NCBI RefSeq assembly: GCF_006345805.1
Contig: NW_021833892.1
Coordinates: 186,001 to 250,000, forward strand
Direction: 5' to 3'
DNA: 64,000 bases
Source: Octopus sinensis
Taxonomy: Eukaryota
In this document: positions 1,401-50,217 of the stretch, piece after piece
Position numbering within the stretch: the first letter of the stretch is position 1
Layout of the letters: each line of letters opens with the position of its first letter
The notes under the pieces: generated by a model
Database searches by the model: none
What the model saw: only the letters and a program-made list of their open reading frames with translations
Told to the model about the DNA's origin: nothing
Program-made: the position numbers and the translations under genes

Positions 1401-1500
1401 TTAATTTATTTACTGTTTGATAAAAAAAATTTGTTTCGTTAAAAGAAACCTAACATATATTTCAAACCAATATTGAATTCTTGAATAATTCATTAGTCTA

Positions 1501-4534: not shown

Positions 4535-6450
4535 AATTACATTTTTATCCGTGGGCTCTTGCAAAGCATTTGTGGGTCTGGTTCGAACTGGTTCTCGGAC
4601 AGAATCCAATTCTCCTCCACAAAATTTATGACCTCAGTAGCCACCAAGTTAGTCATCAACTTGTACAGGTTGGGCATACAGGTTATCGGACGATTTATTC
4701 GTCAGAGCGAAAGGGTTATCTACCTTAGGAATCAAATAAGTTACCACAGTACATAACCACTCTGGAATCGAGCCAGGGTCAGGTGTAAACTGTTCGATTG
4801 TTTGCAATTTTTTATAAAGAAATTATACACCCTATCGACCCCAGGTGTCTTCCAGTCAGAGAGACGAGTTACTACCTCATCAATCTTCTTGTGGATGTCA
4901 GAGACACCACAAAACTTGGTCATCAAGGGAGCATCGGATCCACAAAACGAAAACGATATACCCTTGCGAGGACATGCATTCCACATACTCCCCCATATGT
5001 CAAGCATTTCGACCTTTTTCGGGGTACCCTTCTTCGTCTCTCCGTCCAGTCGTCGATAGAACAGCTTGCGATTAAACTCAAACAGGTTGTTCTCTTGAAT
5101 GAGCTGACATCGAGACTCATGAAATAAGACCTTTTTTGATAAACGAGAATCAGCTCCTCACTTACTGCCTAGGCACGTCTGAAGTTGTCGAGTTCCCATT
5201 TGGCAGCTCGTTTCCGACGAAGTACAGTACGCACCAAAATGGGAGTCTCTCTCTTGATCCCATTGCTCACATTATAATTGTGCCCAGTCAGCTCTTCCAG
5301 CTCGGCCTTTCTTGCGGATTGTGTAAAAGCCTACGCACGATCGTGTAAAATATGGTACGATTGATGCAACTCATAACGTCACTCCTGAGTTGTTACCGAG
5401 GTATCTTTCAGGTCACTCTGCAATCCGCAAGGGGGACAACACGATTCGCAGGAATATGCCTACTAAATATCTCTTTAACCTGCAAGAGTAGCGATAACTC
5501 GCAACTTTGGTGCTCGTGTTGTTCAAAACACGGAAGAATCCTGACGGCGTAACCCCAGCACCAGTCCTCCCCCGCAAGCCAGGAGGAGGGGTTTTGGCTA
5601 GCTTCTTCAGTACATTCAACGATAGGTTTGAGCTAAAGCGTCGATTGAAGCACTAATGCAGGTTAGGCGACCCATTCCTGGGCATCCTGAAAGCTCTTCC
5701 TAACAGATGGGAAAGAGCGGATTTAACCCAGTCCTCCCGTGCACTCAGTTCCTTCTTTTTATTATTATTATTATTTAAGCCAAACAAAATCACCGTCTTA
5801 ACCATTAACTAACACGTTCAGGTGATTCCGACACTTCTCAACAGTCGAGCCATCTTTTCACGATGTTCCGACCGTGACCCAACACACTTTCTGTATGTAC
5901 GGTGAATGGTTTGTGGTCCATTTCCACGATCCCCCCCATTTGCCTCTACGAGAGACTCCAGTGTTCTATGGACAATTTCCCTATCGGTATGGTCCTTCAG
6001 TAGGTTGATAGATCGTTCTTGAATTTTTTCGATTTTTAGCCGGTTCGTTGCCGTCAGGTTACAGCCCCAAGCAGCACATGCATAGCCTATTGTTGGCTCG
6101 ATATACTGCTTGTAAAGGGTCTCTACCCCTGGCGGATAAGTTCTCCCACAGTTCCAAAGGAAGGCTTTTACAAAATTGTAATGGGAAGAACGATATTCTT
6201 TGAGGTTTATAAATATTATATTGTTCAGAATCGAAATTAAGATAACTGACAAATTTTTTTAATAAATTCAGAAAAAAAGTTCAAGGATTAAAATTATCAT
6301 TAATTAGTGTTTCTTTTCCTTAAAAATGCTGTCCCCTTGTCCGGTCACGTCCAGACATCTCTTTTTTCTTATTTTAGTAAGAAAGCTGACTTCCCTGGAA
6401 AGCCAACTCACACTTCCATCAACTGTTCATCTTTTTCGCAATTCATCTTG
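4535..6450 (-). mobile_element. R4/Dong-clade non-LTR retrotransposon, 5' region and RT N-terminus, 3'-truncated, interrupted by a LINE fragment
   Basis: Minus frames WKTPGVDRVYNFFIK and RPITCMPNLYKLMT...LSENQ. 5136-5755 and 6165-6450 are reverse-complement homologues of 46225-47130. Confidence 0.8.
5761..6165 (-). mobile_element. 5'-truncated LINE 3' end (I/Jockey/CR1-like) with (TAA)n tail
   Basis: LYKQYIEPTIGYACAAWG...KIEKIQERS and C-terminus KMARLLRSVGIT*. (ATT)n at 5761-5775. Absent at the matching position of the second R4 copy (46480). Confidence 0.75.
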
Positions 6451-6469
6451 ATTTTCTGATAAGAGTTAA

Positions 6470-6640
6470 AAGAGTACGGTCTGTCAGGCCGGATGTATGA
6501 GTAACCTGAAAAATTGAGCATAGGGGTTTTGGATGACAGCTTTGTTTCTTGCACCCACGCAATGTCCAGATCGCACTTCTTCATTAAACAGAGTTCAGCA
6601 GTGTTGTGGGCAATCCCATTTGGTATGCGTAGTGGTTCTT
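6470..6640 (-). mobile_element. LINE apurinic-endonuclease N-terminal fragment
   Basis: Minus frame NGIAHNTAELCLMKKCDLDIAWVQETKL...SGYSYIRPDR (APE QETK motif). Confidence 0.65.
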
Positions 6641-6959
6641 CCTCGCGGGTACCAGATTTTGGTCGATGTCTTAGGAAAGAAGAACGGCGTATAAAAGAAA
6701 GATGCTTGGAGGCAACTTTGAAGCAATCAACATCACGGAAAATATCCGAGAATACGACGAAAAACTATCATTTGCCACCATTAGAAAATGACGGATTGAC
6801 AAAATTTGCCGTACGACACTGTTTGTTCCCAGGCGATCACCCAGCGAAGTACTAGAACATGCTGTAATCGCTTAACTGCCGTGTTCGATTGGGAACGGGT
6901 ATTTACGACTAAGTATGATCGTACGTTACTAATAAAATTAATTATAGAGTATACGTGTG

Positions 6960-7090
6960 TTTTGACCTCTTCTATTTCCCCCCCTCCCGATTACTGTGGA
7001 GCCTGGTTTGCTGCAAGTTAGTGTAGCATTTTCGCCGATAAGAGTCGACGCAAGTGGCATCTCAAACTAGAAGCTTGTCCTTTTTGCCGG
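6960..7090 (-). mobile_element. CRE-clade non-LTR fragment (RLE domain)
   Basis: Minus frame LLV*DATCVDSY, matching the LxWDxTCVD motif of the other CRE copies. Confidence 0.5.
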
Positions 7091-7240
7091 TAATAGTCGT
7101 CCGAAGACTTCCGATTTGGAAGACTTTATTCAATTAAGTTTTTTTAAAGCTACTATTGAATAACTCTCTGATTTCACAAAAATAAAATAATTACCTTCTC
7201 AATCAGAAAATTTCCTTAATATCATACACATGTATATAAT

Positions 7241-8100
7241 TTTTTTTTTTTTTTTTTTTTATTAAATTTATACAAACAAGACAAAAATTACAGATAGCTA
7301 AGTTAGTTAAAGGCCTCACGAGACACCCGACCAGCCGCGCGAATGGCGAAGACGTTCCCTCGGATCACAGCAATCGACAGACGTTCCAGGAGCCAAGAAA
7401 ACTCTCTTGGATCGTGACTAGTCCTTGAAATCCGTCGACCGAGCGAGCGAAGGAAGCGGAGTGTCTTGGGACCGAAGATCCCGGAGGACTCCAAGGCAAT
7501 TGGAGTAAAGAGCAGCGAGTTGGACAGGTGGCCGTACTTGAGAATCTTTCGCTCCTCGGCCTGCCTGGAAGCGTGCCCAGGATTGGCGGCGGACAGCGCG
7601 AGATTTCCCAGCGAGAACGTGTCCGAGCAGGTAGAATCCCAAATAAGGGATTTCCCCTGCTCGTAGGGGAAGGTGGACATGCCGTCAGGGCGTTTGCCAT
7701 CCCCTCTAACCAATCCAACAGGTTCAAGGATAGACGGGATGCCTGCTGAGGCGAGGCTCTCTGTACGACTGAGTTGAGTTCACTGTGACGGGGGGCACGA
7801 CCGGCACTCCGCCGGCAAGCGAGGGATGCAAACCGTACTCGTCAACAGTTCCCCCACAACGGCATTTGTGCGACTGGCAGATTTTCAGCCCGACACGGAG
7901 GGAGATTGCGATTCTTAGGCATTCCTTGTCCAACAGGTTCCCGATGGAAGGGAGAGGGAGAGCCTTTAACCAGACACCGCTGCTTTCACAGCGACCTGCA
8001 CGGAGGCAAGCGACACGGTGTTGATTGGAGACAGGAAGCAGGCCTTCGAAGATTGCCTGACAAGAGATTTCGTCCCATTGGCGCTGTACAGATTGAGAGT
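7241..8100 (-). mobile_element. CRE-clade non-LTR retrotransposon, 5'-truncated, with poly(A) tail and TSD
   Basis: CRCGGTVDEYGLH zinc knuckle and GDGKRPDG...LIWDSTCSDTF...ESSG RLE motifs. Poly(T) at 7241-7260 on the plus strand. 10-bp TSD TGTATATAAT at 7231-7240 and 8101-8110. Confidence 0.9.
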
Positions 8101-16000: not shown

Positions 16001-16202
16001 CTTGGCGGTTAAATGAATAAAATCTGTGCTTTTTTTAAATCGCAAAAGATTTGACCTTTTTAATTAAAGAATTAAATTTCTGCATTATTTCAAATATTCA
16101 TCAAAAGGATTCGGTAGTCTAATATTGTAATTAGGTTTAGCCAGAATTATTGAAATTAAATGTTAAATAGCTTAATTTCAGTGCGCAGCGAAATTGTTAT
16201 AG

Positions 16203-17610
16203 ATGAATGATAATCCAAAACAAGGACTGTTTGGGCGACTCAACACAAAAATTAACAAAAAACAATCCATCGACAAAAGCATGACCATAACTCAGCCAGT
16301 TCTATTCACTCACAATCTACACGTGAGCAAAGATTTGTCTGGTCTGCCATCAGAGTGGAAATCCTTGCTTAAAGCATCACAAATTCCGTTTTCAAATCAT
16401 TTCCAACAGTTATAGAGAGGAAGAACAGCAGAAAAATCCTGGGAAGGTAATAAATGCCCTGCAAGTGCTGGAAGATGTTGAACAAAAACACAAAAAATTT
16501 TTACAAAATGCAAACTCTGAAATAAGCTTGGATGAAGCAGAAGAAACAACTCCGAAGTTTGAAAAGAGAAACAAGTCTCCAAAAGGAGGAAAAGTTAGCA
16601 TTGAGTACGTCATCGAGAAACTAAGTATAGTTATGCATCCATAGTTAGGGTCTCTTGTTTCTCTAGAAGACCCTCGTGAAATATACACAATTAAAAAGAA
16701 ATTGGGTTCTGGGTTAGTTTTTTGGTATTTCTTAATGTGCTTTAGTGCTTCTGGTGTAGTCAATTTGGCAGTGAATAATCTTCTTGGATCTACTGTTGCC
16801 ATAAAGTCGATGAATCTCGAACTACAGCCCAAAAAAGAACTTTTAATTTCGGAAATCGAAGTTAACATTTGATTTTAATTTCATAGATAATGCGGAACTT
16901 AACTAAACACGTCAACATAGTTAATTATCTTAATGGCTTCCTGGTTAGTAACAGTGAATTGTGGGTGGTGATGGAATATCTTGATGGAGGGGCCCTTACT
17001 GATGTTGTGATGGAGACAATGATGAAAGAGGAGCAGATGGCTACAGTTATTGGAGACGTTGTTAATGGATTAAACTTTCTTCACAGTCACAACATAATTC
17101 ATCGAGATATAAAAAGCGACAATGTTCTTCTTGGACTCAACGGAGATGTCAAATTAACTGATTTTGGGTTTTGCGCGCAGGTTGTGGGGGATAGTGCCAA
17201 TCGTAACACAATGGTGGGGACTCCCTACTGGATGGCTCCTGAAGTGGTTGCCAAGTATTTTTTATATTTGAACAACATCTAGACAAAAATATGGCAAGAA
17301 AGTAGATATTTGGAGTCTTGGGATTATGGTGATTGAAATGATTGATGGGGAACCGCCGTATCTCAACGAACACCCATTGAAAGCTCTCTATCATATTGCG
17401 AACATTGGACGACCCCAGATTCAGGAGGCAGAAAGAATGTCATCTGCTTTGTCCTCTTTCGTTGACAGATGTCTCGAAGTCAAACCAATAAACAGATCAA
17501 ACTGCGAAGAACTGATTGAACACGAGTTTCTCAAAGGACCAAAAGCCCCTCGCTCTGAAATCAAACAACTAATTCTTGTCGCTCAAGACAGTATAAAAAA
17601 GAAATTTTAG
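16203..17610 (+). CDS. PAK1: Group I p21-activated kinase with CRIB domain, multi-exon
   Basis: [17 protein letters not shown]...[10 protein letters not shown]. Kinase motifs KLGSG|[62 protein letters not shown]1/2/3 paralogue not distinguishable. Confidence 0.93.
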
Positions 17611-19329: not shown

Positions 19330-22150
19330 TAATGAACTGAATGGAAGAAGGTGGAATTCTTGAAACAGCCCCAAAATGTTCATAAGCATGCAAATAATAG
19401 GGATTGGAAATCAATCAGGGAAGATTTTTTTAAACGATAAAGACAGAAAATCAACTGGAAACCTTGTTGAACAACCAAAATTTATTGTTTTGTAGTTTGA
19501 AAAGCTCTTTTTAGTGCAAGACCATAAATCAGATATGCAAAAAACTTTGAAACGATCTATCTTACTGGAAGAAGTCTTTAGAGCAATAAAGAAGCTAAAG
19601 CATGGTCGCTCTACGGCCCTGGACAACATCATCTTTAAGTTGTTAAAGCCCAGAAGAACCTGGAAATTTCTTGATAACATAATTGTGAATAAGGGATACT
19701 AATACAGATCCAGCAAGGAAATCAATTTACCTGGCCTGTAGAAAACTTGCGTTTTATCATTCTCCTGAACACCCAGCAGTAGACTTTTATCTTAATCGTC
19801 GTTGTTTGACTCAAAGATGTGACAGACGATTATTTAGCTTATAGTCAAAATACTTTCAAAACCAGAAGGTCTACGGGTAAAATAGTATGGTTTCTATAGC
19901 ACTGGGCTATTCTGCAAAAATTCCGGAGAACCCAGAATATCCTTGGAATTGATCTCTCTAGAGCAGGGGTGCGCAAGCTTTTTGGGTTTGCGGCCGCATA
20001 GCATTTATTTTTCCTTCTCTTCCACGGCCGCACATTTTCTGCATTATTTTTTCGATATTAATATAGTAATTTTTTTTAATTATTAAAAGTGACCGCATAA
20101 GTTGCCCATTGTCATCGAGACCGAATGAGTTCTTGAACAGGAAATGCTCTCGTTCATCAGCGACATCATATTATTAAAATAAATAATTATTTCATGGAAA
20201 AAAGATAAGAAAGAAGGAAAATTAATTAAAAGAAATGTATTATACAAGTTATTCTAATGACAGCCAGGATCTTTGGTATTTTTTGCGAGCTTATTGAAAT
20301 CCACTGGTAGGATAGATATCATTATGCGCAAACATGACTCTAAGTTTGCATCCGTTATCCGAGATCTATATTGACTTTTTAAATATTTCATTTTGGAAAA
20401 TGTAGACTCACATAAATATGTTCTTCCGAATACAACGAGAATATTTCTTGCCAATAACTGATTTATTGTTATACTCTTCTGAGACATATTCAGTTAGGCG
20501 TGCAACAAATCCTTGTTTTCTACCCAACATTGCTGGTGCGCCATCTGTGCATATTCCTCTTAGACATGTCATGTCCAATTTGAATTCCAAACAACATTGT
20601 TTAACTATTTTAAATATATCTTGACCCCGTACATTTCCAGGTAGTGACTTCATGGATAGAAAATCCTCATGTATTTCAAAATCGAAGGATAGAGTACGAA
20701 TAAATATGATCAGCTGAGCAGAATCACATATATCATTCGACTCATCAATGGCAAGTGAAAATAACGTAGTTTGAGAATTTAATTTTTGTAGGAGTGATAG
20801 ATTAAGATGCTCGGCAATATGAAACTTTCGGCGCTGAATTGTGTCACGTGAAAGTGGAATTGCTTCAAAGTTATGCTCCTTGTTGGGATCAATGCATTTA
20901 ACTGATTCCATGATACATCTTTTCATGAGTTCGCCGTCTGAAAAAGGTTTTCCAGCAGATACAAGGATATGAGCAACTCGAAAGGATGCTTCAACTCTTG
21001 CATTTGCCACATTTAAAAAAGTTTTTAAACATTTTTTTTTGTCTTAATTTGTATTTCAAATTTTCGACGGAATCTTCTCTTGAACACTTGGACTTGACAA
21101 CTAGGTGGTCTAAATGTCTTTGAAAATGTTGTTTAGCATTGTCCCGTTTTATAGTTTTCACAATCTCATGGCACAATAAGCATTGTATGCTATTGTTGTC
21201 TGTTTCGACTACGAAGTATTCACTTTCACAGTTGATATTAAATTTTCTTTTTTCTTAATTCAAAGAACGTCGTCTTTTAACAGGTAATGACATAATATAT
21301 AAAAATAGAATTTTATTTAATATGAATATTTTTAATTATTATTTAGGGTTTTTCTTGATTTATTAATACTATGAGCATTATATTTAAGATTAGTTGCTCG
21401 ATGAACTAATTGTGCCCACGGCCGCACATTCATCGACTCACGGCCGCACTTGCGCACCCCTGCTCTAGAGCTTTTGATATTTTACGTCGAGAAAAAGTGA
21501 TTGAGATGTCGCAAAGTTTCCTGAATCATGACACAGTTGAATTGATTCGAATTTTGTTATCTAGAAAAATCAGAGTTCGTGTTGGAAATTATCTATCTCA
21601 AAAGTTCTTAACGACGTTTACCATATTTAAGGAAATTTACTGTCTTTTTTGTTATCAGAATATATCTGGAATCTGCCATACGGGCGATTGATGACGAATA
21701 TCTCAAAACTTGATGTTAAAAGAGTTAAACGAATGTACTCACGAAAAACTGAAATATTAAAGAAACCCAAGAAACTTCACTTTCTCCTAGGAGATTCTGA
21801 AGACATTGCAATGAGAAAGTTCCTATCAACGGCCAAAATTTCTAAACCGATGAAGAAATGGATAGTCAGACACCTGGACGGCCTTTCGCTCCAAATAAGC
21901 ATTTATAAACCTATCCTGATTTACAATCCTGATAACTGACGAATTTCTGAACTAGAGAAGGAACTCAACTCATTCCATGGAAAAAACTACGAAATCTCTT
22001 GAATTCCGGTGGCTAAAGCTAATAAAGAAGGATGTTTTGTATGGGATTTGTTCCAAAGACCCTTTGAATCAAGTTATCGAGGAGTAGCAATAGAATCTGT
22101 TTGTGCATATCCTAATATTAGAGCCAAGCATACTACAGAATGAAGCATTG
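19330..22150 (+). mobile_element. RTE-clade LINE relic split by a hAT insertion
   Basis: GRSTALDNI; LGIDLS|RAFDILRREKVIE is contiguous once the hAT is removed; LGDSEDIAMRK...IYKPILIYN. Confidence 0.8.
19964..21462 (-). mobile_element. hAT (Buster/SPIN/Charlie-like) DNA transposon, internally deleted
   Basis: Perfect 14-bp TIRs CAGGGGTGCGCAAG and 8-bp TSD CTCTAGAG (19956-19963, 21463-21470). Transposase motifs SLAIDESND, CTDGAPAM, VFGRTYLCESTFSKMK. Subterminal CGGCCGCA repeats. Confidence 0.95.
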
Positions 22151-23999: not shown

Positions 24000-24242
24000 G
24001 ACTTGACAGAATGTGCAATCACAGATTGCACGACTTTGAATAGATGTGCAATTAACAGATTTTGAAAAACCACTTTGATAGTTGAAACCACATTAGCACA
24101 ATCATTAACACAATTTACCACCAATTGACGCACGACCTTGAATAGAGTGTGCATTAACAGATTTTGAAAACACTTTGATAGTTGAAACCACATTAGCACA
24201 ATCATTAACACAATTTACCACCAATTGACGCACGACCTTGAA
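24000..24242. repeat. ~101-bp tandem repeat, about 2.3 copies
   Basis: Unit starts at 24031, 24133 and 24233 (CGACCTTGAATAGAGTGTGC...ACCACCAATTGACGCA). A diverged copy lies at ~42039-42131. Confidence 0.9.
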
Positions 24243-25745
24243 TTTGTCGCCCGCAGGATTGCGTCCCCTCTTAATATTTGGTATTTGGACGACTGTACTA
24301 TTGGTGGTCCGCCCGACATTTTGCTAAACGACTTGCAATCTCTACTCCCGGCGTTGTCATCTATTGGTCTTGAAATCAATTCTCTAAAATCTGAAATCGT
24401 TAATCTTAACGTCGAAGACCTCACCTTCGAAGACCTTTTTTGCCCAGTTTCGTGGCCTCTGCCCGATCTGAGGCAGACCTCTTATTCTGAACTTGAAATC
24501 CTGGGTGCCCGATCCACCACCAATCGGTCTCTCGTATTCTCGATTCCAAGAGAAATGCTCTTGCTTCTCTTTGGATAAACTTGTGGACATCGATTCCCAT
24601 CCGCTTTTTTTATCCTCAAAAAACTTTTTTGATTCCGAGGATCAATTATGTCCTAAGGAGTTCCTGTTGCTTTTCTGTTCCCTCTGCTTTGGAGTCTTTT
24701 GACGCTCTGGTGCGTTCTTCAGCCGAGATTATTTTTAACGTCAAGTTCGATGATGTCGGTTGGCGTCAGGCCAAACTTCCTGTTCCTTTTGGTGGGCTTG
24801 GGCTCCGCTCGGCTCTCGACATTTCTCTTCCTTCGCTTTCCTTTCATCGTCTTCAGGATTGTATCTTCTTGTCCATAAGATTCTTGAAAAATCGCCCGGA
24901 TCTCGTTTGGACTCTGATATTAATTCTGCACTTTTGCTTTGGAAGGAAAAGGGCTTGAGTTCCCTTCTGATAGGTCCCTCCAACGTGAATGGGATAAATT
25001 CTTAGTAAGCATCATGCGGACTCGTTGGAGGCTCTCCTGAACCAGCACAGACTGGCTTGTTACCGTGCCAGCCGCCAACCGCATTCTGGCTCTTGGCTTA
25101 ACTGCCTTCCTTCGACCCATTTGGACACCTGTCTTGACTCCGACGCCCTCCGTTTTGGCATTTGCCTCCGCCTCGGACTTCCGATCTGTAGTCCCCACCC
25201 CTGCCGGTGCGGATCTACTATGGACGTATACGGGCTCCATGCCCTCTCCTGCAAGAAAAGCGCGGGTCGTATTCCACGCCATTCGGCGATTAACAGATCA
25301 TTCTCGACTCACTCGAAAAGCCGGCTACCCTTCTGTCCTTGAGCCTAAGGGTCTCGACCGTGGTGACGGGAAAAGGCGGACGGCTCTACGTTGTTCTCGT
25401 TTTATTCTGGAGACCTTTGGTCTGGGATTCCACTTGTGTGGATACCTTCTCAAAGTCTTTCATCAACGAATCGGCCTCTCTTGCTGGGTCTCGTGCTAAT
25501 AAGGCTGAGCTTTCGAAGTGCCGGAAATATCAGTCTTTGATGGATACTTTTGGTTTTGGCCAATTGTTGTCGAGACTTCCGGCGTCTTTGGCTCCGGGAC
25601 CCTCACTTCCCTAAAGAAATTGGGACATCTTTGTTCTTCGCGGTCCAAGGACCCTAGGAATTTCTTTCCTCATTCAGAGGATCCTGCTGGCTGTCATGCG
25701 TGGCAACAGCTGTTCCCTCCGTCTCGCTGGGAGAATTTATTAGTT
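24243..25745 (+). mobile_element. CRE-clade non-LTR retrotransposon, 5'-truncated
   Basis: PLNIWYLDDCTIGG, AKLPVPFGGLGLRS, CRCGSTMDVYGLHALSC, GDGKR, WDSTCVDTF, VETSG. Confidence 0.9.
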
Positions 25746-25889
25746 TGTTGACTTTATTTTTGTTAATTTCTACATAAACTTATAGTTGTTTGATGAAACA
25801 GGCCCTCCGCAGGAGCTAGGTCGCGGTGAGCGAAGCGAGCTGCCGAGCTAGTATCCAATAAATAAAGAAAACTATTAGTAAGGAAATGG

Positions 25890-27742
25890 TTATTGAGCAT
25901 ATTTCACTGCTCGCAGGAAAGAAGTGTAGAATGCAGACGGAGAACCGAATCTTGAATTAAATTCTGGGTGGAATTGAGTAGCTACAAAAAAGGGATGGTC
26001 TTGCAATTCACAAAAAAATACAACAATCGATCTCAACGATCTCCACGCTCATCCGGACTGCCGAAAAGCCAACAAATTTCATTCCCTTCGACGACAAGAG
26101 TTCGAGATATTGCTTATCAAACTACTATTTGCCCACGTCACAACAACCTCATAATTATTAAATTGTCGTTCGTGGATGCGATCGGTCTCAAATAGTCCTC
26201 CTGTTAAATATATTACGTGATAGTTGTGTTTTTTTGTAAAAAAGTCATACTCGTCAGGGAATTGGTCGATGAGATGAGAACCTCTTTAGAACCATCTTTC
26301 ATGCTCAATTTCTCGGCCTCATTTTTTATCCGGAAACCTCGAGTTAGAGCAAGGGAAATACCACGGGAAATGGTGTAGTTGGATCGACCTCCGTCGTATT
26401 GGCAGATTCCATTCCACAAACATTCCGTGCAAACTCGATTATGGCAAATTGCATTCCGTAGCAGATCCCTTAAAGCATTGACACTAACATTTACCTAAAA
26501 ACGGGATTTTGTTTACTCTAGCATATCCCGCAGCAAGTCCTCTTCCTTCGGCACCCTTCACGCCTGCTCCTCCAGCCACATAATTCCCCTGTAAATGACC
26601 GGTCACTTTCTTACCGACACGACTTCAATAAATTCCAAGAAGACGTATGTTCAGGACTTCCTTGATCTTCCAAATCCGATGACTTGATTTTCTGCAAATA
26701 ATAATGACCCCGCCAACTTTTAGTGTAAAGGGACTGTCCAACCAAATGATTGAATGCTGGAAGGCCTCTTGGACTGCGTCGCATTGGTCGTATTCAGTGA
26801 ATTCGCCCACAACTGCGACCATCAGACCGTCTGTCTCCAATTTGTCACTTTTATTTAAATGTACTGCAATACGCATATTTCGCGAACAATTGAGCTGCAA
26901 TATCAATCATAGGCTTGTCTACAGGTGTAACCTTCTGTTGTATCAGAGACATAAGGTTCTGTTCTACCAAAGACTGAGGCATTTTAAAAAAGTCTCCATC
27001 GTAAGAGAGGATCTACAAAGTCTTCAGAACAGTACTTTGGGTAATTCTAAAGTTGTTCTTTCTCTTTCCGAGTGTTTGCTAATAATCTAAGATGCGGAAA
27101 AACAGTTACCACATCAGGCGATAAACCAAATTCTTTAAACTTCTCAACCAAAGTTTCAAGTTGCCTCAAGTTATTGTCGTCGGCCTTAACATCAAGTCAT
27201 AAGACCACCTCATCATTCCACACATGTATGTGGAAAATGCTTTGATTTCCAATTTTAGAAACAAACTTGCCAAGAGAGAACTGTGCCAATTCGTTTTCAT
27301 TTTTCAAATCTCCAGCGCACTACATTGAACATGGTATATTACATCAATGAGACATATTTCTGGTACTAATTCATTCCCGGGCGTTTGGGGTGTGTCCAAT
27401 AGTCGTTGTACAACATGCTCTTGGGCTTCGAAGGCAGAGTTAAAAGTAGAAGCTGCGTGGTTATTTTCGCAATAGAGTTGATTTATGGTGATCACATGTG
27501 CACTCGTAAGGTCAATTCCAAGAAACCGTTCAAATTTGCCGACAGCAACTGAGCAAACCATTCCATCGTTTAATACTGTCATCTCACAGTCTAAGTAGAG
27601 TAAAGACGTTACATTCAATTTGTTTTGGAGTAGCATCAATGTGAATTAGAGTGGTCATTGATGACTTAAGTAGTAATCCAATACTGCAGGTGACCTCTGC
27701 TCTAGTAGTTTTATTGTCGCCAGTAATGAGGATGTATTTCAT
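25890..27742 (-). CDS. CTPS1: CTP synthase homologue with degenerate synthetase domain and retained glutaminase triad, about 13 micro-introns
   Basis: Starts MKYILITG. Retains [41 protein letters not shown]|[30 protein letters not shown] and [13 protein letters not shown]...RAVKYAQ*. Introns of 22-26 nt restore the frame. One or two homopolymer frameshifts (~26582, ~26335). Confidence 0.88.
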
Positions 27743-28910: not shown

Positions 28911-31712
28911 TGTCACCGGCTGGATAATGCCCTGGGTTGGATAATGCCCCCTCAACGTTATTTTAAAAAAATAAATGGTACATATGTAGTAGTTGGCGGC
29001 CACTTTTTAGCGAATTTTAAAAAAACTATATTTTTTTTGGTGAATAATTACCTTTTTTAAATAATATTACTATAAAAAAATTAGAAGATCTTTTGTTGAA
29101 TAACCCTTCCAGCAGTCTGATATGAGAATGGTGCCTTCTTCTACATTCTCAAGAATAGCCTTCGTAAGGGTCTTCATTGTTCTGTCAGGTATTGCTTCTA
29201 AGAAGCATTGGTTCGTTTCTCTGCAGATTCCGCCGAAAACCCATTGCTCAGGCAACATTCTGCCTCTGTTGTATTTCCTTTTTGAAAAATGACTTTCGTC
29301 AATTTCCACAATCATTCCTTCACCGCCTATTATATTATAAATTTACGCACGCACACCTATTTTGGATCTCTGACGAGATGACGAGACGAGATTTTTAGTT
29401 AAAAAAAATATATAATTAAAAATAATACAATATAAAAATAATAAAATCCCACGCTACTTTAATTTAAATGAGAAGTGAGGTCAATCTATTCAATCTACCC
29501 ACAAATATGTCAGAAGCAATCAATTTCATGCAATCCAGAGGAATCATCCCAAAAAAAAGTGTGTCGCAACGGACACCAAATGACTTTAAACATTGGCAGC
29601 TCTCCGGCTTGGAATTGCTACAGAAGGGGCTGTCGAAGTAAATCGAGTCTAAAAACTGGTATTTATATCATTAAAACTCAACAGGAACGTGGTTAGCAGG
29701 AACCAAAGTACCATTCGAAGATATAATCCGGTTTGTCTACCTGTGGGCAAAAAATATATCTTCTATGGAGATATGCATGGAAAATCTTGGTTGGGCTTCA
29801 CATACAACCGTGGACTGGTCAATGTACATGCGTGAAATTTGCATGCTATCATTGACATCTCGTCAGAGATCCAAAATAGGTGTGCGTAAATTTATAATAT
29901 AATAGGCGGTGAAGGAATGATTGTGGAAATTGACGAAAGTCATTTTTCAAAAAGGAAATACAACAGAGGCAGAATGTTGCCTGAGCAATGGGTTTTCGGC
30001 GGAATCTGCAGAGAAACGAACCAATGCTTCTTAGAAGCAATACCTGACAGAACAATGAAGACCCTTACGAAGGCTATTCTTGAGAATGTAGAAGAAGGCA
30101 CCATTCTCATATCAGACTGCTGGAAGGGTTATTCAACAAAAGATCTTCTAATTTTTTTATAGTAATATTATTTAAAAAAGGTAATTATTCACCAAAAAAA
30201 ATATAGTTTTTTTAAAATTCGCTAAAAAGTGGCCGCCAACTACTACATATGTACCAAATAAATATTTTTTCAAATTAATTTTGATTAGATTTTTTGATTT
30301 TCTTAATTATTTTAGTAATTTATTAAGGTTTTTTTTCAATTAATCTAGCGTGAAAATTTGTTTTGGTATCTAAGTTTTCCAATTTGAAAAAATAATAAGT
30401 ATAATCGATTAAATCTATATTTCAGAAATGGTTTTACTCAACCTTACCAAGATGAACTTGAAGTAATCAAAAATATTCAAATAGATGTTTTTTATATTGA
30501 CCGATTTCAGAAATCTGAAAAGAAAAGATACAGAAAATTAGCAGAACAGTTAATTTTCGAGGAGGAAGGGATAGTATACTTAAAATACAAAAACCAGAGG
30601 TTACGCTTTTTTCCCAAAGAAGAAAAGGAACTTAAACTAAAAACTATCGAGGTGATCGTTACATAATTATTATAGATTAAACATATGAGGACACATTTTG
30701 GAAGAGATAAGTTGCTTTCGATATTGAGAAAGGAAATTTATGCAGTAACCCGAGATGAAATTACTGCTGTGATCTCAAAATGCGTTCACTGTCAGGTGCA
30801 TATGTATTAAATTATTTTTAGACAAAAAAGTTGATGGCGACTAAGCCAACAATCACTCCTATTATTGCAAGAGGGCCTAAAGATCGCTATATTGCAGATT
30901 TAGTGGATTTAAGAAGGTATGCTAGCCTTAATAGCGATAATGGATGGGTATTTTTTGTATAAATTGTAGTTGGTTGTGGTTATAGACTCATTTTCTAAAT
31001 TCGCAGTTGTAAAACTTGCCAGGCGGAAATCAGCGGAGGAAATTACTAGAAAATTAAAGAACATTTTTTACATGATTGGTCCCCCATTTATTTTACAGAC
31101 GGATAATGGGAAAGAATTTAAGAACAAATGTATGGAAACAATGTGTAATGATCTGAAAATCATACACATAAGTGGACGCCGTAAAGCACCATGGATTCAG
31201 GGTCAAGTAGAAAGGCAAGTTATTTGTAACGAGGACGATTGAGACATGATATTGATGCGAATCCAAATAACCGAAAATACCCCCTATACGATCAGATTGA
31301 TTCCACTATATATGAAATATCGGAGGTTGATAAAGACAAATGCGTACTTAAAGATCTTAATGACGAATCATGCAAATATGTACACAAAAGTCGTATAAAA
31401 AAAATATAACTCTTATAAAAAAATTTTTATATAATAAAAATTCATGAATTTTTAATATTTGTTTTTAAATGGTAGACCTAAAAAATTGTATAATTATAAT
31501 AAAATACGTTATTGATTCGGAAAAATTGGTGATGCCGGTTTTTGCCGACTCTTTGAAAAATTCTTTCAATCAAAAAATGGATAAAAATTGAATAAATCGA
31601 ATTAATTCCATTATCAAGTTATTTTTAATTAATTATCAGGTTATTTTCGTTTGATTTAAAAAAAATTTTAAGGGGGTATTATCCAACCCAGGGCATTATC
31701 CAGCCTGTGACA
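28911..31712 (+). mobile_element. Ginger (Gypsy-integrase-related) DNA transposon with intron-containing integrase
   Basis: 42-bp TIRs TGTCAC.GGCTGGATAATGCCCTGGGTTGGATAAT.CCCCCT with 2 mismatches; 5-bp TSD CAATT. Integrase HFGRDK...CVHCQ, IADLVDL, IDSFSKF, QTDNGKEF, QGQVER. Introns at 30652-30675, 30796-30821 and 30948-30969. Confidence 0.9.
28977..30255 (+). mobile_element. Merlin (ISXO2/IS1595-like) transposon in fold-back configuration
   Basis: Inverted arms 28977-29380 and 29856-30255; 8-bp TSD AAATAAAT. Transposase 29468-30162 with IVEIDES...WVFGGI...ISDCWKGY, two 26-nt introns (29659-29684, 29880-29905), and truncated after DCWKGY. Confidence 0.92.
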
Positions 31713-40494: not shown

Positions 40495-41975
40495 TAACTT
40501 TGGGCCCATTATTATTTGCCCTTTCCGTGGATTTTATTGCCCGTAAGAATTTGTCGCCTCTGAATATTTGGTATTTGGATGATTGTACTATTGGTGGTCC
40601 GCCCGATATTTTGATAAAGGACTTGGAATCTCTAATCCCAGCTTTGTCATCCATTGGTCTCGAAATTAATTCTCTCAAATTTGAAATCGTAAATGTTAAC
40701 ATCGATCGTGTTAGTTTTCAAAACATTTTTTCTCAGTTTCGAGGCCTTTTGCCCGATCTGAGACATACTTCCACTGCTGATCTCGAAATCTTGGGTGCTC
40801 CGATCTACGACCAATCCGCCATCCGTATTCTTAATACCAAGAGGAATGCCCTTTCTTCCCTTTGTGATAAACTTGCAGATATTGATCCCCACCCTGCTTA
40901 TTTCATTCTCAAAAATTATCTTCTGATCCCGAAAATCAATTATGTCCTAAGGAGTTCCCGCTGCTTTTCTATTCATATTGCCTTGGATTCTTTCGACGCT
41001 CTGGTGCGTTCTTCCGCTGAGAAGATTTTTAATGTCAAGTTTGATGACGTTGGTTGGTGTCAGGCCAAACTTCCTGTATCCTTTGGCGGTCTGGGGCTTC
41101 GCTCCGCGCTCGACCTTTCTCTTCCCGCTTTCCTTTCATCTTCTTCAGGATTGTATCTTCTTGTCCACAAGATTCTTGTAAAATCACCCGAATCAACTTT
41201 GGACTCTGATATCAATTCTGCACTTTTACTTTGGAAGGAAAAGGATTTCGTCTTACCGTCGGAACGATCTCTCCAACGTGAATGGGACAAAATTATTTGT
41301 GAATATTACGTTGACTCGTTGGAGCGTCTCTCGGACCAGCACAGACTAGCTTGCTTCCGTGCCAGTCGCCAACCGTATTCTGGCTCCTGGCTTAACTGCT
41401 TTCCCACGACCCATTTGGATACCGGTGTGGATCAACGATGGACACATACGGGCTCCATGCCCTTTCCTGCAAGAAAAGCGCAGGTCGCATACCTCGTCAT
41501 TCGGCTCTTAACAAGATCATTCTCCAAGCCCTCGAAAAGGCAGGGTATCCTTCTGTCCTTGAGCCCATTGGTCTTGACCGTGGTGATGGAAAAAGGCCTG
41601 ATGGCTCGACGTTGTTCGCTTTCGACACTGGTAAACCACTAGCTTGGGATGCCACGTGTGTTGATTCCTTCTCTAAGTCTGCCATCAACGAATCCGCCTC
41701 TTTGCCCGGGTCCCGTGCTAATAGGGCTGAATATACAAAATCCGAAAAATACCAGGGCTTGTTAGACGGCTTTTGGTTTTGGCCAATTGTTGTTGAGACT
41801 TCGTGCGTCTTTGGCACAAAGACAGTTGATCATCTGAAGAAACTTGGCCACCTCTGTTCATTACGCTCCAAGGATCCTAGGGAATTTACATTCCTAATCC
41901 AAAGGATCCTGTTGGCCTTTGTGCGTGGGAACAGCTGTTCCATCCGGCTTGCTGGCCGATTAATTTCTGATTAAT
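40495..41975 (+). mobile_element. CRE-clade non-LTR retrotransposon, 5'-truncated, largely open
   Basis: 380-aa ORF LGPLLFAL...WYLDD and 178-aa ORF HALSC...GDGKRPDG...WDATCVD...VETS. Confidence 0.92.
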
Positions 41976-48846: not shown

Positions 48847-50217
48847 ATGTCGGACTCTGATGTGGATATCGTTGATCCATGGACTGTCAAAACCAAAGGA
48901 AAAAATGGGATTGACTATCAAAGGCTGATTGGTTTTTTCATCAATATAACAATCCTTCCAGAAAAATTTGGCTCCAACCAGATCACTCAAGAATTACTAT
49001 CAAAATTCGAACGGACAACAAACAAGAACGTGCATTTTCTGCTTCGTCGTGGAATATTTTTTTCACATCGGTTTATATGTAAATTTTTAAAATTTAGGGA
49101 CTTAGACGTCCTTTTGGATCATTACTCAAGCGGAAAACAATTTTATTTATACACAGGAAGAGGACCTTCTTCAGAATGTCTCCACATTGGCCACATAATT
49201 CCTTTTATTTTCACAAAGTTAAATTTTTTAATCAACTCAGATGGCTACAAGAAGTATTTGATGTCCCGCTCGTTATACAGCTCACTGATGATGAAAAATT
49301 CCTTTGGAGGGATCTGTCTATTGAAGAACTCGAGAAAGTGACCATATCCAATGTTAAGGACATCATTGCGGTGGGATTTGATCCTCGAAAAACTTTCATC
49401 TTCTCTGATTGGGATTATCGAGGGTTGACATTCGGGGCTCATCTTCGATAGAAAATCAATGGCTTTCAATCAAACTATTTCTCAAGTTGCAAAATTGACG
49501 ACATTTAATCAAGCACGAGCCATTTTTGGCTTTACTGAGTCAGATAATATAGGAAAGATTGGTTTTCCAGCCGTCCAGGCTGCTCCTGCTTTTGTTTATA
49601 GTTTTCCACGGATTTTTCCTTCAGCAAATCTTAATGAGACAATGTGTCTTATTCCATGTGCTATTGATCAGGAAAGTTGACCTAATTATGTTTAGGATCC
49701 CTTTTTTCGAATGACGAGAGATGTTGCTCCTAGAATTAAACATCCAAAACCGGCACTAATTCATTCCCGATTCCTCCCCTCGTTACAGGGGATTGATAGT
49801 AAAATGAGTGCGAGTGATCCCAATTCGTCTATTTTTGTGAATGACTCGCCTAAGACTATTCGCAAGAAAGTTGAAATTATGGGATTTCATCGCAGATTAT
49901 GAAGTATGCCTTTTCTGGTGGATGGTCTACTGTGGAGGAGCATAGGAAATTCGGAGGGAATTGTGAAGTGGACGTTTCATTGGCCTATCTCAGTCTGTTC
50001 ATGGAGGACGATGCTAAGTTTGAAGATATTCGTTCTGTTGTTTTGTAAGGGATAATATAAATAGAGATATGCGTCTGGAGATATGCTCACTGGGGAACTT
50101 AAACAGATCTTGTGTGACACGCTTATTCCATTTATGGAGGACTATCAACGGAGACGACAGGAGGTGACAGACTTGGATGTCGATATGTTCATGTCAATTA
50201 GGAGCATCCCTATATGA
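48847..50217 (+). CDS. WARS1: Cytosolic tryptophanyl-tRNA synthetase, multi-exon
   Basis: [44 protein letters not shown]|[32 protein letters not shown]. Confidence 0.95.

What the first reader, a model, noticed from the sequence alone, without database searches (positions are those of the whole stretch)
25890..27742. CTP synthase homologue with a dismantled synthetase site but an intact glutaminase triad
Seen, spliced translation: the ATP/UTP-binding motifs of the amidoligase domain are replaced. GGVxSxxGKG becomes GDNKTTRAE; KIDPYxNxDxGTxSPxEHGEVFV becomes [16 protein letters not shown]; DLDLGNYERF becomes [10 protein letters not shown]; GDYLGKTVQVVPH is absent; ELGGTVGDIE becomes [10 protein letters not shown]; KTKPTQ becomes NNLRQLE. 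The class I GATase nucleophile (GICYGMQ) and H-x-E (FHPEF) are retained, while PGGFG becomes AGGAG and ERHRHRYEV becomes ERQFNNYEV. About 13 introns keep canonical ends and the exons stay open, which argues for purifying selection rather than decay. Established: those motifs are near-invariant in CTPS and are needed for UTP phosphorylation and GTP-activated glutaminase; CTPS also polymerises into cytoophidia. Inference: a pseudo-synthetase repurposed as a stand-alone, GTP-uncoupled glutaminase or amidohydrolase (ammonia release or glutamine use in a parasite), or as a non-catalytic regulatory or filament subunit. I know of no described case. This is the best candidate for new biology in the window.
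Basis: partly seen in the sequence, partly recalled or inferred. Interest (0 to 1): 0.85.

Follow-up and report, generated by a model that had tools for sequence, protein, structure and literature searches.

The report
CTP synthase gene with dead synthetase site
A tiny-intron parasite genome (probably the dicyemid Dicyema japonicum) carries a full-length CTP synthase relative in which every nucleotide-binding site has been replaced but the glutamine-splitting centre is intact, so it cannot make CTP and has probably been kept for another job.

Summary
The gene is real. It lies on the minus strand, from ATG 27742 to TAA 25890, with 14 exons and 13 GT-AG introns of 22-50 nt. It encodes a ~498-aa two-domain CTP synthase (CTPS) homologue (human CTPS1 E=5e-52, full length).

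Measured against 120 canonical CTPS:
- The synthetase half keeps 20 of 62 near-invariant residues (22% identity).
- The glutaminase half keeps 36 of 54 (40% identity).
- The catalytic residues K16, K38, D70 and E145 are changed, as are the UTP and ATP contacts and every conserved GTP contact.
- The Cys-His-Glu triad, the oxyanion glycines and Gln403 are kept.
- The hydrophobic core pattern of both halves is kept.

This rules out simple neutral decay and a working CTP synthase.

First, the homology-best splicing leaves a 1-nt gap near 26581. The same kind of gap occurs twice in the endoplasmin gene of this window, so I read it as assembly error. Second, "open exons with canonical introns" carries no weight here: TrpRS kept such a path in 150 of 150 simulated frameshifts.

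No orthologue, transcript or structure could be obtained. Whether it acts as a glutaminase, a deamidase or a scaffold is inference.

The parts
25890..27742 (-). CTPS-like gene, start codon to stop codon. It has 14 exons and 13 introns. The conceptual product is 498 aa, with X at a 1-nt gap.
   Evidence: Human CTPS1 E=5e-52 over residues 1-493 against 1-545.
27613..27742 (-). Exon 1: MKYILITG + GDNKTTRAE (remnant of the P-loop) ... [10 protein letters not shown].
   Evidence: S12N, G13K, G15T, K16R and G17A relative to Drosophila/human numbering.
27591..27612 (-). Intron 1: 22 nt, GTAACG..TTAG, phase 1.
   Evidence: Chosen with all three reference proteins.
27343..27590 (-). Exon 2 (82 aa). It holds YCEMTV (H55Y, V58M), [10 protein letters not shown] (D70A) and [14 protein letters not shown] in place of GDYLGKTVQVVPH.
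   Evidence: Searched alone, it finds no CTPS and no orthologue in 1.84 billion representatives.
27320..27342 (-). Intron 2: 23 nt, GTAATA..GTAG, phase 0.
27209..27319 (-). Exon 3: CAGDLKNEN in place of LGGTVGDIE (E145D on the last codon of exon 2, G147A, T149D, D152N, E154N).
   Evidence: The 3' end may be 27206 if the 21-nt version of intron 3 is used.
27185..27208 (-). Intron 3: 24 nt (or 21 nt from 27205), GTGGTC..TAAG. It is the only intron whose length is a multiple of 3, and it carries an in-frame TGA.
27110..27184 (-). Exon 4: [10 protein letters not shown] in place of GEQKTKPTQ (K192N, T193L, K194R), then FGLSPDV.
27087..27109 (-). Intron 4: 23 nt (or 26 nt from 27112), GTAACT..TTAG.
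27036..27086 (-). Exon 5: [17 protein letters not shown] (R216K). It is about 14 residues shorter than the canonical sequence.
27013..27035 (-). Intron 5: 23 nt, GTACTG..GTAG.
26873..27012 (-). Exon 6: end of the synthetase domain and the interdomain linker.
   Evidence: This junction is the least certain in the synthetase half: the three references chose introns of 25, 40 and 17 nt.
26848..26872 (-). Intron 6: 25 nt, GTATTG..AAAG.
26718..26847 (-). Exon 7: start of the glutaminase domain, [16 protein letters not shown] (K306E, Y307F; D312 kept).
26692..26717 (-). Intron 7: 26 nt, GTTGGC..GCAG.
26615..26691 (-). Exon 8: [25 protein letters not shown](R). The Trp equivalent to filament-contact W358 is kept, and H355 is changed to T.
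   Evidence: The filament residues are taken from PMC8325340.
26589..26614 (-). Intron 8: 26 nt, GTAAGA..ACAG, phase 2. This is the strongest-looking intron of the gene.
   Evidence: Chosen with all three references.
26580..26581 (-). A two-base codon, AT, where three bases are expected. This is a 1-nt gap inside G-I-(I)-V-A-G-G-A-G. It is probably an assembly deletion; otherwise it is a real frameshift.
   Evidence: all three references. The same type of gap occurs at 2286 and 3242 in the endoplasmin gene.
26495..26588 (-). Exon 9: (R)[15 protein letters not shown]...IPFL(G). The oxyanion glycines are kept. F373A and R376K.
26623..26644 (-). Alternative 22-nt GT-AG intron (GTCTTC..GAAG). Together with retention of intron 8, it keeps the frame open without any correction.
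   Evidence: Such rescue paths are always available in this genome.
26469..26494 (-). Intron 9: 26 nt, GTAAAT..TAAG, phase 1. The AAG acceptor is fixed by homology (PFLG|ICYGMQ).
26362..26468 (-). Exon 10: [17 protein letters not shown]... It holds the nucleophile Cys (residue 355, equivalent to C399) and Gln403.
26318..26361 (-). Intron 10: 44 nt, GTATTT..TGAG. Versions of 47 and 50 nt are also possible. This is the least certain junction.
26251..26317 (-). Exon 11: [22 protein letters not shown]. This is a shortened wing (L13) loop with R449K and L450D.
26201..26250 (-). Intron 11: 50 nt, GTATGA..ACAG. Homology supports it: [16 protein letters not shown] matches NSVMRKLYGDADYLEER.
26145..26200 (-). 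Exon 12: (R)[18 protein letters not shown]. The GTP-binding ERHRHRYEV motif is lost here (R479F, R481N).
26122..26144 (-). Intron 12: 23 nt (or 26 nt from 26147), GTTGTG..GTAG.
26022..26121 (-). Exon 13: [32 protein letters not shown](C).
26000..26021 (-). Intron 13: 22 nt (or 25 nt from 26024), GTATTT..CAAG.
25890..25999 (-). Exon 14: [14 protein letters not shown]... with the triad His and Glu (residues 473 and 475, equivalent to H526 and E528), then the TAA stop. There is no C-terminal tail of the kind animal CTPS carry.
24225..25750 (+). Fragment of a non-LTR retrotransposon, ending about 140 nt downstream of the gene's stop codon. It is context, not part of the gene.
   Evidence: The ORFs are similar to the element at 40500-41974.

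Best explanation
This is a vertically inherited CTP synthase gene of a tiny-intron parasite, most likely the dicyemid Dicyema japonicum. It has lost CTP synthesis but is still kept as a protein-coding gene.

**Shown.**
- The two-domain CTPS architecture and the buried hydrophobic pattern of both domains persist.
- In the N-terminal amidoligase domain, the residues that bind ATP and UTP/CTP and that catalyse UTP 4-phosphorylation are replaced.
- The residues lining the ammonia tunnel are replaced.
- All conserved contacts of the allosteric activator GTP are replaced.
- The C-terminal class I glutaminase centre is intact: nucleophile Cys, His-Glu, oxyanion Gly-Gly and Gln403.

**Inferred.** The protein folds like CTPS. 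It can no longer phosphorylate UTP or respond to GTP. With the tunnel and the GTP 'plug' gone, any ammonia made at the Cys-His-Glu site would be released to solvent or to a partner. The protein would therefore work as a GTP-independent amide hydrolase, with the dead synthetase domain serving as a scaffold or oligomerisation module. The substrate could be free glutamine, or protein Asn/Gln side chains as reported for human CTPS1.

**The single 1-nt frame gap** near 26581 is most likely an assembly deletion.
For: **Homology and architecture.**
- Human CTPS1 aligns over the full length at E=5e-52.
- Pfam finds CTP_synth_N plus GATase.

**Loss of the synthetase.**
- CTP_synth_N scores 39 bits against 403 for a fly CTPS. 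The PyrG equivalog model scores 215.8 bits against a cut-off of 462.75.
- Only 20 of 62 near-invariant columns of the synthetase half are kept, against 36 of 54 in the glutaminase half (Fisher p=3.6e-4).
- Identity to canonical CTPS is 22% in the synthetase half and 40% in the glutaminase half. Canonical pairs show 53% and 52%.
- Residue map: K16R, K38 gap or H, D70A, E145D, T149D, D152N, E154N, K192N, T193L, K194R, R216K, H55Y, P52Q, V58M. The roles of these residues are those given for Drosophila CTPS in PMC8325340.

**Targeted loss of the GTP site.** Six of 6 conserved GTP contacts in the glutaminase domain are changed (K306E, Y307F, F373A, R376K, R479F, R481N). Of the other invariant columns of that domain, 12 of 48 are changed (p=7e-4).

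**Glutaminase centre kept.** C399, G401, Q403, H526, P527, E528, G371, G372 and G374 are all retained.

**Not neutral decay.**
- The 258 codons of the synthetase half have no stop. About 17 stops are expected, so P is about 2e-8.
- Hydrophobic residues are kept at 80% (synthetase) and 96% (glutaminase) of core columns, against 43% in shuffles, with 0 of 5000 shuffles reaching the observed value.

**Frame gap as an assembly error.**
- Two gaps of the same type sit inside conserved exons of the endoplasmin gene.
- The published D. japonicum assembly merges an Illumina assembly with a PacBio Falcon assembly, and no polishing step is described.

**Amide-hydrolase reading.** CTPS1 deamidates histone H1, and this requires C399/H526/E528 (also PMC7872357).
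Against: - There is no transcript, orthologue or structure, so current expression and selection are not shown. dN/dS could not be computed.
- Read literally with the best splice sites, the frame breaks before the catalytic Cys.
- Canonical CTPS has low glutaminase activity without GTP and without the 4-phospho-UTP intermediate (PMC9138612), so a GTP-blind version might be nearly inactive.
- F373A and the shortened wing alter the entrance to the glutamine site.
- Retention of the three triad residues alone would occur by chance about 30% of the time at 67% overall retention (my arithmetic).
- Four or five of 13 acceptors are AAG or GAG, against 0 of 22 in three control genes. Two introns are longer than any control intron. 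This could mean weakened splicing.
- The gene sits among transposon fragments.
- The hydrophobic-core test is biased upward, because the alignment itself favours such matches.
Confidence: 0.55

Rival explanations
1. It is a recently dead unitary pseudogene. The gene lost CTP synthesis long ago, survived for a time under some other constraint, and is now inactivated by a real 1-nt deletion near 26581. That deletion truncates the protein before the catalytic Cys.
For: - All three references prefer the frame gap, and the premature stop follows if the gene is read literally.
- Non-YAG acceptors and two unusually long introns.
- Transposon-rich surroundings.
- No matching protein in the databases.
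Against: - Identical-type 1-nt gaps occur twice in the conserved endoplasmin gene of the same window, so the gap is not specific to this gene.
- The organism's TrpRS is also absent from the databases, so absence from them says nothing.
- There are no stop codons in any exon and no other lesion in about 1.5 kb.
Confidence: 0.2
2. It is a wholly non-catalytic pseudoenzyme. The protein is kept as a scaffold, a regulator or a filament subunit, and retention of the triad is incidental.
For: - The hydrophobic cores of both domains are kept.
- The filament-contact Trp (W358 equivalent) is kept.
- Without GTP, the glutaminase activity of CTPS is intrinsically low.
Against: - All nine residues of the glutaminase centre that are invariant in canonical CTPS are kept. 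The 18 invariant residues lost from that domain all lie outside the glutaminase centre; 10 of them sit in the GTP contacts and wing loop.
- The second filament contact, H355, is changed.
- No canonical partner CTPS is known from this organism. That point was not testable here.
Confidence: 0.15
3. It is still a working CTP synthase whose active site has merely diverged in a fast-evolving lineage.
For: The full-length two-domain architecture is present. K16R, E145D, K194R and R216K are conservative changes.
Against: - D70A, loss of K38, K192N, T149D, D152N, E154N and P-loop glycines changed to K/T/A hit residues that are 98-100% conserved.
- K16A and K38A mutants of Drosophila CTPS showed dramatically reduced activity.
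- The other proteins of this window are not extremely diverged: TrpRS is 58-63% identical to animal orthologues and PAK is 52% identical.
Confidence: 0.03
4. It is a gene-model artefact, and correct splicing would restore the canonical motifs.
For: Tiny introns make many alternative models possible.
Against: - The changed motifs lie inside long exons that are contiguous with conserved flanks ([12 protein letters not shown]..., ...[12 protein letters not shown]).
- No other reading frame carries the canonical motifs.
- tblastn finds no second CTPS locus in the window.
Confidence: 0.02

Closest known systems
Glutamine-hydrolysing CTP synthase (PyrG / CTPS1, CTPS2 / URA7, URA8; EC 6.3.4.2)
   Same: - Same two-domain order and near-full-length colinearity.
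- Eukaryote-type N-terminus MKYIL.TG.
- GLSPD, GxCxGxQ and HPEF motifs.
- Triad, oxyanion glycines and the W358 equivalent.
   Different: - The catalytic and ligand residues for ATP, UTP/CTP and GTP, and the tunnel residues, are replaced.
- About 35 conserved alignment columns are deleted from the synthetase half.
- No C-terminal regulatory tail.
- Fails the PyrG equivalog cut-off: 215.8 bits against 462.75.
CTP synthase C-terminal region-related (seleno)protein (NCBIfam NF004836 / PRK06186)
   Same: It shows that a CTPS-type glutaminase domain can exist without a working synthetase domain. The glutaminase half of this protein matches the model over its full length (110 bits).
   Different: - That family is a stand-alone protein of about 228 aa in prokaryotes, whereas this protein keeps the whole synthetase domain as a degenerate module.
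- The score is far below the 260-bit cut-off, and a canonical fly CTPS scores about the same (125.7 bits). This protein is therefore no closer to that family than any CTPS is.
Moonlighting protein deamidation by CTPS1 and other glutamine amidotransferases (histone H1 N76/N77, IRF3)
   Same: This activity needs only the C399/H526/E528 centre, which is what this protein retains (PMC12074999; PMC7872357).
   Different: It was shown for an otherwise fully active human enzyme. Nothing here shows a protein substrate.
Viral pseudo-amidotransferases (herpesvirus vGAT, homologues of PFAS/FGARAT)
   Same: They are a precedent for a nucleotide-biosynthesis amidotransferase turned into a pseudoenzyme with a new role (PMC12282450).
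   Different: They come from a different parent enzyme. There the enzymatic function as a whole is considered lost, whereas here the glutaminase centre looks intact.

Membership tests
Glutamine-hydrolysing CTP synthase (PyrG/CTPS) | N-terminal CTP_synth_N domain followed by a class I GATase domain, colinear over the full length. | tested here: met
   Pfam PF06418 scores 39.2 bits (cut-off 26.1) and PF00117 scores 67.5 bits (cut-off 22.8). Human CTPS1 aligns over residues 1-493 against 1-545.
Glutamine-hydrolysing CTP synthase (PyrG/CTPS) | Score above the curated equivalog cut-off of TIGR00337 (PyrG) or NF003792. | tested here: not met
   215.8 bits against 462.75, and 194.9 bits against 308. 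A canonical fly CTPS scores 751 and 693.
Glutamine-hydrolysing CTP synthase (PyrG/CTPS) | Catalytic residues for ATP-dependent UTP 4-phosphorylation: P-loop GxGKG with Lys16, plus Lys38, Asp70 and Glu145. | tested here: not met
   K16R with G13K, G15T and G17A; K38 is a gap or His; D70A; E145D. Residue roles are from PMC8325340.
Glutamine-hydrolysing CTP synthase (PyrG/CTPS) | UTP/CTP-binding residues: Asp152, Glu154, Lys192-Thr193-Lys194, Thr149, His55. | tested here: not met
   D152N, E154N, K192N, T193L, K194R, T149D, H55Y.
Glutamine-hydrolysing CTP synthase (PyrG/CTPS) | Allosteric GTP site: Lys306, Tyr307, Phe373, Arg376, Arg479, Arg481, Leu107, Phe50. | tested here: not met
   K306E, Y307F, F373A, R376K, R479F, R481N, L107F, and position 50 is Pro. 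Six of 6 conserved contacts in the glutaminase domain are changed (p=7e-4).
Glutamine-hydrolysing CTP synthase (PyrG/CTPS) | Formation of CTP from UTP, ATP and glutamine. | not testable with these tools
   This needs a recombinant enzyme assay or complementation of laboratory ura7 ura8 yeast or pyrG E. coli.
Class I (triad) glutamine amidotransferase domain | Nucleophile elbow G-x-C-x-G-x-Q, His-x-Glu, and oxyanion Gly-Gly. | tested here: met
   GICYGMQ (C355), FHPEF (H473, E475) and AGGAG (G327, G328, G330). Activity itself was not tested.
CTP synthase C-terminal region-related (seleno)protein (NF004836) | Stand-alone protein of about 228 aa scoring above 260 bits. | tested here: not met
   110.1 bits. 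The protein has a full N-terminal domain.
Pseudogene (unitary, non-processed) | Frame-disrupting lesions or in-frame stops in exons that are not attributable to sequence error. | tested here: inconclusive
   There is one 1-nt gap near 26581 and no exonic stop. The same type of gap occurs twice in the endoplasmin gene, so it cannot be told apart from assembly error here.
Pseudogene (processed) | Loss of introns. | tested here: not met
   Thirteen introns are present.

The most novel reading that the evidence does not exclude
The dicyemid has no working CTP synthase at all, so it would be an animal that depends on host cytidine for CTP. Its only CTPS gene would have been converted into a GTP-independent glutaminase or protein deamidase that uses the dead synthetase domain as a scaffold. 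This would be a natural separation of the two half-reactions of CTPS.
Probability: 0.25. Interest if true: 0.8.

Novelty: new variant of a known kind. Interest (0 to 1): 0.55.

Why it matters
[quoted passage not shown] It is one of the most conserved metabolic enzymes: canonical pairs from all domains of life are about 53% identical in the synthetase half.

A full-length copy has lost the ATP, UTP and GTP sites but kept the glutaminase centre. It would matter in three ways.
- It would mark loss of CTP synthesis, and therefore pyrimidine dependence on the host, in an animal parasite.
- It would be a natural experiment on what the CTPS glutaminase domain does when it is uncoupled from GTP and from the ammonia tunnel.
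- It would give independent support to the recently reported non-metabolic (deamidase) roles of CTPS.

It also carries a methodological warning. In genomes with 20-30-nt introns, an open spliced reading frame is not evidence of selection. Unpolished long-read regions can mimic pseudogenes.

Tried and rejected
- **Shortest-path splicing search.** Many open paths exist, so it has no discriminating power. I replaced it with a homology-guided aligner of my own that models splicing and frameshifts.
- **First model M1.** It used the 22-nt intron at 26644-26623. I rejected it as the primary model because all three references prefer the canonical 26-nt intron plus a 1-nt gap, which restores [11 protein letters not shown](I)VAGGAG.
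- **A 16-nt intron at 26216-26201.** It gives the wrong frame. The 50-nt intron fits homology.
- **Orthologue searches.** The full protein finds nothing above 31% identity. The synthetase half alone finds no hit at E<=1e-3. Exon 2 alone, against 1.84 billion representatives, finds only two repetitive proteins that I take to be unrelated (7-8 short matched stretches in 719- and 3166-aa proteins).
- **Exact-sequence look-up of a window ORF.** Not on record.
- **TrpRS as a control for database coverage.** The best hit is 61-63% identical, so this organism's proteome is not in the database. Absence of the CTPS-like protein there therefore means nothing.
- **Structure prediction and the representative search with the spliced protein.** I did not try to get round this, so there is no fold evidence.
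- **Supplement of the D. japonicum genome paper.** It lists pathway names only, with no gene-level statement on CTPS.
- **Organism identity.** It rests on indirect fit only: GC 35.6% against 36.7%, introns of 22-33 nt, abundant LINE-type repeats, and bilaterian-like TrpRS. A myxobolid myxozoan is the alternative and was not excluded.
Full report
**What is there**

The finding lies on the minus strand. Translation starts at ATG 27742 and ends at TAA 25890. Three-frame translation shows CTPS-like segments that hop between frames every 50-250 nt. This is the signature of very short introns.

I built the gene model twice:
- by hand;
- with a dynamic-programming aligner of my own that aligns a reference protein to DNA while allowing GT-AG, GC-AG and GA-AG introns of 15-70 nt and penalised frameshifts. 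The references were three canonical CTPS returned: a fly (P0076), a nematomorph (P0077) and a chytrid (P0040).

All three references give the same architecture of 14 exons and 13 GT-AG introns. Eleven introns are 22-26 nt, one is 44 nt and one is 50 nt. A few junctions are ambiguous by 3 nt. The product is about 498 aa.

**Is it a CTPS homologue?**

Yes.
- phmmer against the PDB gives human CTPS1 at E=5e-52, aligned over residues 1-493 against 1-545. Human CTPS2, archaeal, fly, yeast and bacterial CTPS follow.
- Pfam finds CTP_synth_N (39.2 bits) followed by GATase (67.5 bits), both above their cut-offs.
- tblastn finds no second CTPS-like locus in the 64-kb window.

**Are the motif losses real?**

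Yes. Each replaced motif lies inside an exon that is contiguous with conserved flanking sequence, and no other frame encodes the canonical motif. The one correction is that the GDYLGKTVQVVPH segment is replaced in place rather than deleted.

I mapped the residues that the 2.5-A Drosophila CTPS structures identify (PMC8325340). Drosophila and human numbering coincide at these positions.

| Site | Changes in this protein |
|---|---|
| Catalytic residues | K16R (with G13K, G15T and G17A, so the P-loop is destroyed); K38 gap or His; D70A; E145D |
| UTP contacts | H55Y, T149D, D152N, E154N, K192N, T193L, K194R |
| ATP ribose contact | R216K |
| Ammonia tunnel | Y42L, P52Q, H55Y, V58M; about 7 residues of the 41-50 loop are deleted |
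| GTP contacts | K306E, Y307F, F373A, R376K, R479F, R481N, L107F; position 50 is Pro |
| Kept | C399, G401, Q403, H526, P527, E528, G371, G372, G374, D312; the filament-contact Trp (W358 equivalent) |

In the same paper, K16A and K38A mutants showed dramatically reduced activity.

**Quantifying the asymmetry**

I aligned the product with the 120 canonical CTPS.

| Measure | Synthetase half + linker | Glutaminase half | Calls |
|---|---|---|---|
| Columns >=95% conserved that this protein keeps | 20 of 62 | 36 of 54 | 39, 46 (Fisher p=3.6e-4) |
| Median identity to canonical CTPS | 22% | 40% | 46 |
| Median identity among canonical pairs | 53% | 52% | 46 |
| Pfam domain score, this protein against a fly CTPS | 39 against 403 bits | 67.5 against 124 bits | 53 |

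- The NCBIfam PyrG equivalog model scores 215.8 bits against a cut-off of 462.75.
- Within the glutaminase half the losses are targeted. Six of 6 conserved GTP contacts are changed, against 12 of 48 other invariant columns (p=7e-4). Most of the remaining losses lie in the wing loop.
- The protein has therefore lost the synthetase site and the GTP coupling device together, while sparing the glutaminase centre.

**Is it decaying?**

- The synthetase half is 78% different from canonical CTPS, yet its 258 codons contain no stop. About 17 are expected from its base composition, so P is about 2e-8.
- It keeps hydrophobic residues at 80% of the columns that are hydrophobic in canonical CTPS. The glutaminase half keeps 96%. 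Shuffles give 43%, and 0 of 5000 shuffles reach the observed value. This test is biased upward, because the alignment itself favours such matches.
- A single locus cannot decay neutrally at two different rates. For most of its history the protein was therefore under selection to be made and folded, with much stronger constraint on the glutaminase centre.

First, the frame is not strictly open.
- With the homology-preferred splice sites the exons sum to 1496 nt, which is 2 modulo 3.
- All three references place a two-base codon at 26581-26580, inside GGA ATT AT_ GTG GCT GGA GGA. That is G-I-(I)-V-A-G-G-A-G, which corresponds to the canonical G-[VI]-[IL]-V-P-G-G-F-G.
- Read literally, the mRNA would stop before the catalytic Cys.
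- An alternative 22-nt intron at 26644-26623, combined with retention of the strong 26-nt intron, keeps the frame open. It discards the conserved [11 protein letters not shown] segment.

To judge the gap I modelled three conserved genes of the window in the same way.
- The endoplasmin (GRP94) gene at 1489-3874 has two gaps of exactly this kind, inside conserved exons at short homopolymers: ACTT_GGG at 2286 and TTG_AATCG at 3242.
- The PAK kinase and TrpRS genes have none.
- The published D. japonicum assembly merges a Platanus assembly with a PacBio Falcon assembly, and no polishing step is described.
- I therefore treat the gap as a probable assembly deletion. A real frameshift cannot be excluded here.

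Second, 'canonical intron ends and open exons' is not evidence of selection in this genome. After a random 1-nt exonic deletion, TrpRS still had an all-GT-AG open path to its true stop in 150 of 150 trials.

**Introns compared with control genes**

- The 22 control introns are 22-33 nt. All end in YAG. All begin with GT except one GA-AG intron in TrpRS.
- The CTPS-like introns look similar at the donor (GTA or GTT). Four acceptors are AAG and one is GAG. Two of the AAG acceptors (introns 9 and 13) are fixed by homology.
- Two introns, at 44 and 50 nt, exceed the control range.
- This may indicate weaker splice signals. It is noted but unexplained.

**Source organism**

- The window has 35.6% GC, 22-33-nt introns, many LINE-type and DNA-transposon fragments and a TrpRS that is 58-63% identical to bilaterian orthologues.
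- Among animals, introns this short are reported only from myxobolid myxozoans and Dicyema japonicum (PMC13644364).
- D. japonicum has 36.7% GC and 49% repeats rich in LINEs (PMC6736024). It is the best fit but is not proven.
- The organism's own proteome is absent from the protein databases. That explains why nothing more than 31% identical was found for the CTPS-like protein. It also explains why the synthetase half alone and exon 2 alone found no relatives.

**How it most likely works**

- Shown: the anatomy described above.
- From established CTPS biochemistry (PMC8325340, PMC9138612): without K16, K38, D70, the P-loop and the UTP triphosphate clamp there can be no 4-phospho-UTP, and so no CTP.
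- Without the GTP contacts there can be no GTP activation and no GTP 'plug' over the vestibule.
- With the tunnel residues changed, ammonia has no guided route.
- Inference: if the Cys-His-Glu centre turns over, the protein is a GTP-independent amide hydrolase that releases ammonia. The substrate could be free glutamine, or protein Asn/Gln side chains. Human CTPS1 does the latter with the same triad (PMC12074999; PMC7872357).
- The synthetase half would then serve as a scaffold.
- A purely structural role and a recently dead gene are the main rivals.

**Comparison with what is known**

- The protein derives from CTPS but fails four of its defining features, so it should not be annotated as CTP synthase.
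- One literature search for a CTPS pseudoenzyme found only a paper on viral pseudo-amidotransferases.
- NCBIfam lists a prokaryotic stand-alone 'CTP synthase C-terminal region-related' family. This protein is no closer to that family than any CTPS is.
- I rate it a new variant of a known kind.

**Limits**

- There is a single sequence, with no transcript and no orthologue.
- The rest of the genome could not be searched for a canonical paralogue.

Noticed in passing
window 1489-3874 (+), with gaps at 2286-2287 and 3242-3243: An endoplasmin/GRP94 gene, 40% identical to my from-memory copy of human GRP94, with introns of 17-33 nt. It carries two 1-nt gaps inside conserved exons at short homopolymers (ACTT_GGG and TTG_AATCG). 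These are most simply uncorrected long-read assembly deletions, so apparent frameshifts in this assembly should not be read as pseudogenes.
   Followed up: yes
window 49672-49695 (+): The TrpRS gene (48847-50217, 7 introns) needs one non-canonical GA-AG intron of 24 nt (GAAAGTTGACC...TTTAG) between the conserved CAIDQ and DPFFRMTRD. No GT-AG alternative keeps the frame.
   Followed up: partly
window 25890-27742 (-) compared with 1489-3874, 16160-17598 and 48847-50217: Five of 13 acceptors in the CTPS-like gene are AAG or GAG, against 0 of 22 in the three control genes, all of which end in YAG. Its introns are also richer in GC (35% against 26-30%). The cause is unknown.
   Followed up: partly
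window 6808-6926 (-): A complete 5S rRNA gene (Rfam RF00001, 84 bits). It lies between ORFs at 5818-6252 and 7303-7713 that resemble retrotransposon ORFs found elsewhere in the window. It could be a 5S-linked or 5S-targeting element, or a coincidence.
   Followed up: no
window 28965-29350 and 29882-30267: A 386-nt inverted repeat, 99% complementary, with 531 nt between the arms. Each arm holds an identical 81-aa ORF with an ISXO2-like (IS1595-type DDE) transposase domain. An integrase-core (rve) fragment lies next to it at 30970-31242.
   Followed up: partly
window 24225-25750 (+), 40500-41974 (+), 5818-7713 (-): Several copies or fragments of one non-LTR-type retrotransposon family with shared ORF segments (e.g. 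...LDRGDGKRPDG...). One fragment ends about 140 nt downstream of the CTPS-like stop codon. Pfam gave no hit for these C-terminal ORFs.
   Followed up: partly
window 16160-17598 (+): A PAK-family serine/threonine kinase gene with 6 introns of 22-33 nt, 52% identical to my from-memory copy of human PAK1. It has a much shortened N-terminal regulatory region.
   Followed up: no
window 51239-51688 (-) and 20408-21010 (-): A Tc5/pogo-type transposase DNA-binding domain ORF (HTH_Tnp_Tc5, 43 bits), and a 200-aa ORF that resembles hAT-like or GTF2IRD2-like transposase-derived proteins from memory only. Pfam gave no hit for the second.
   Followed up: no
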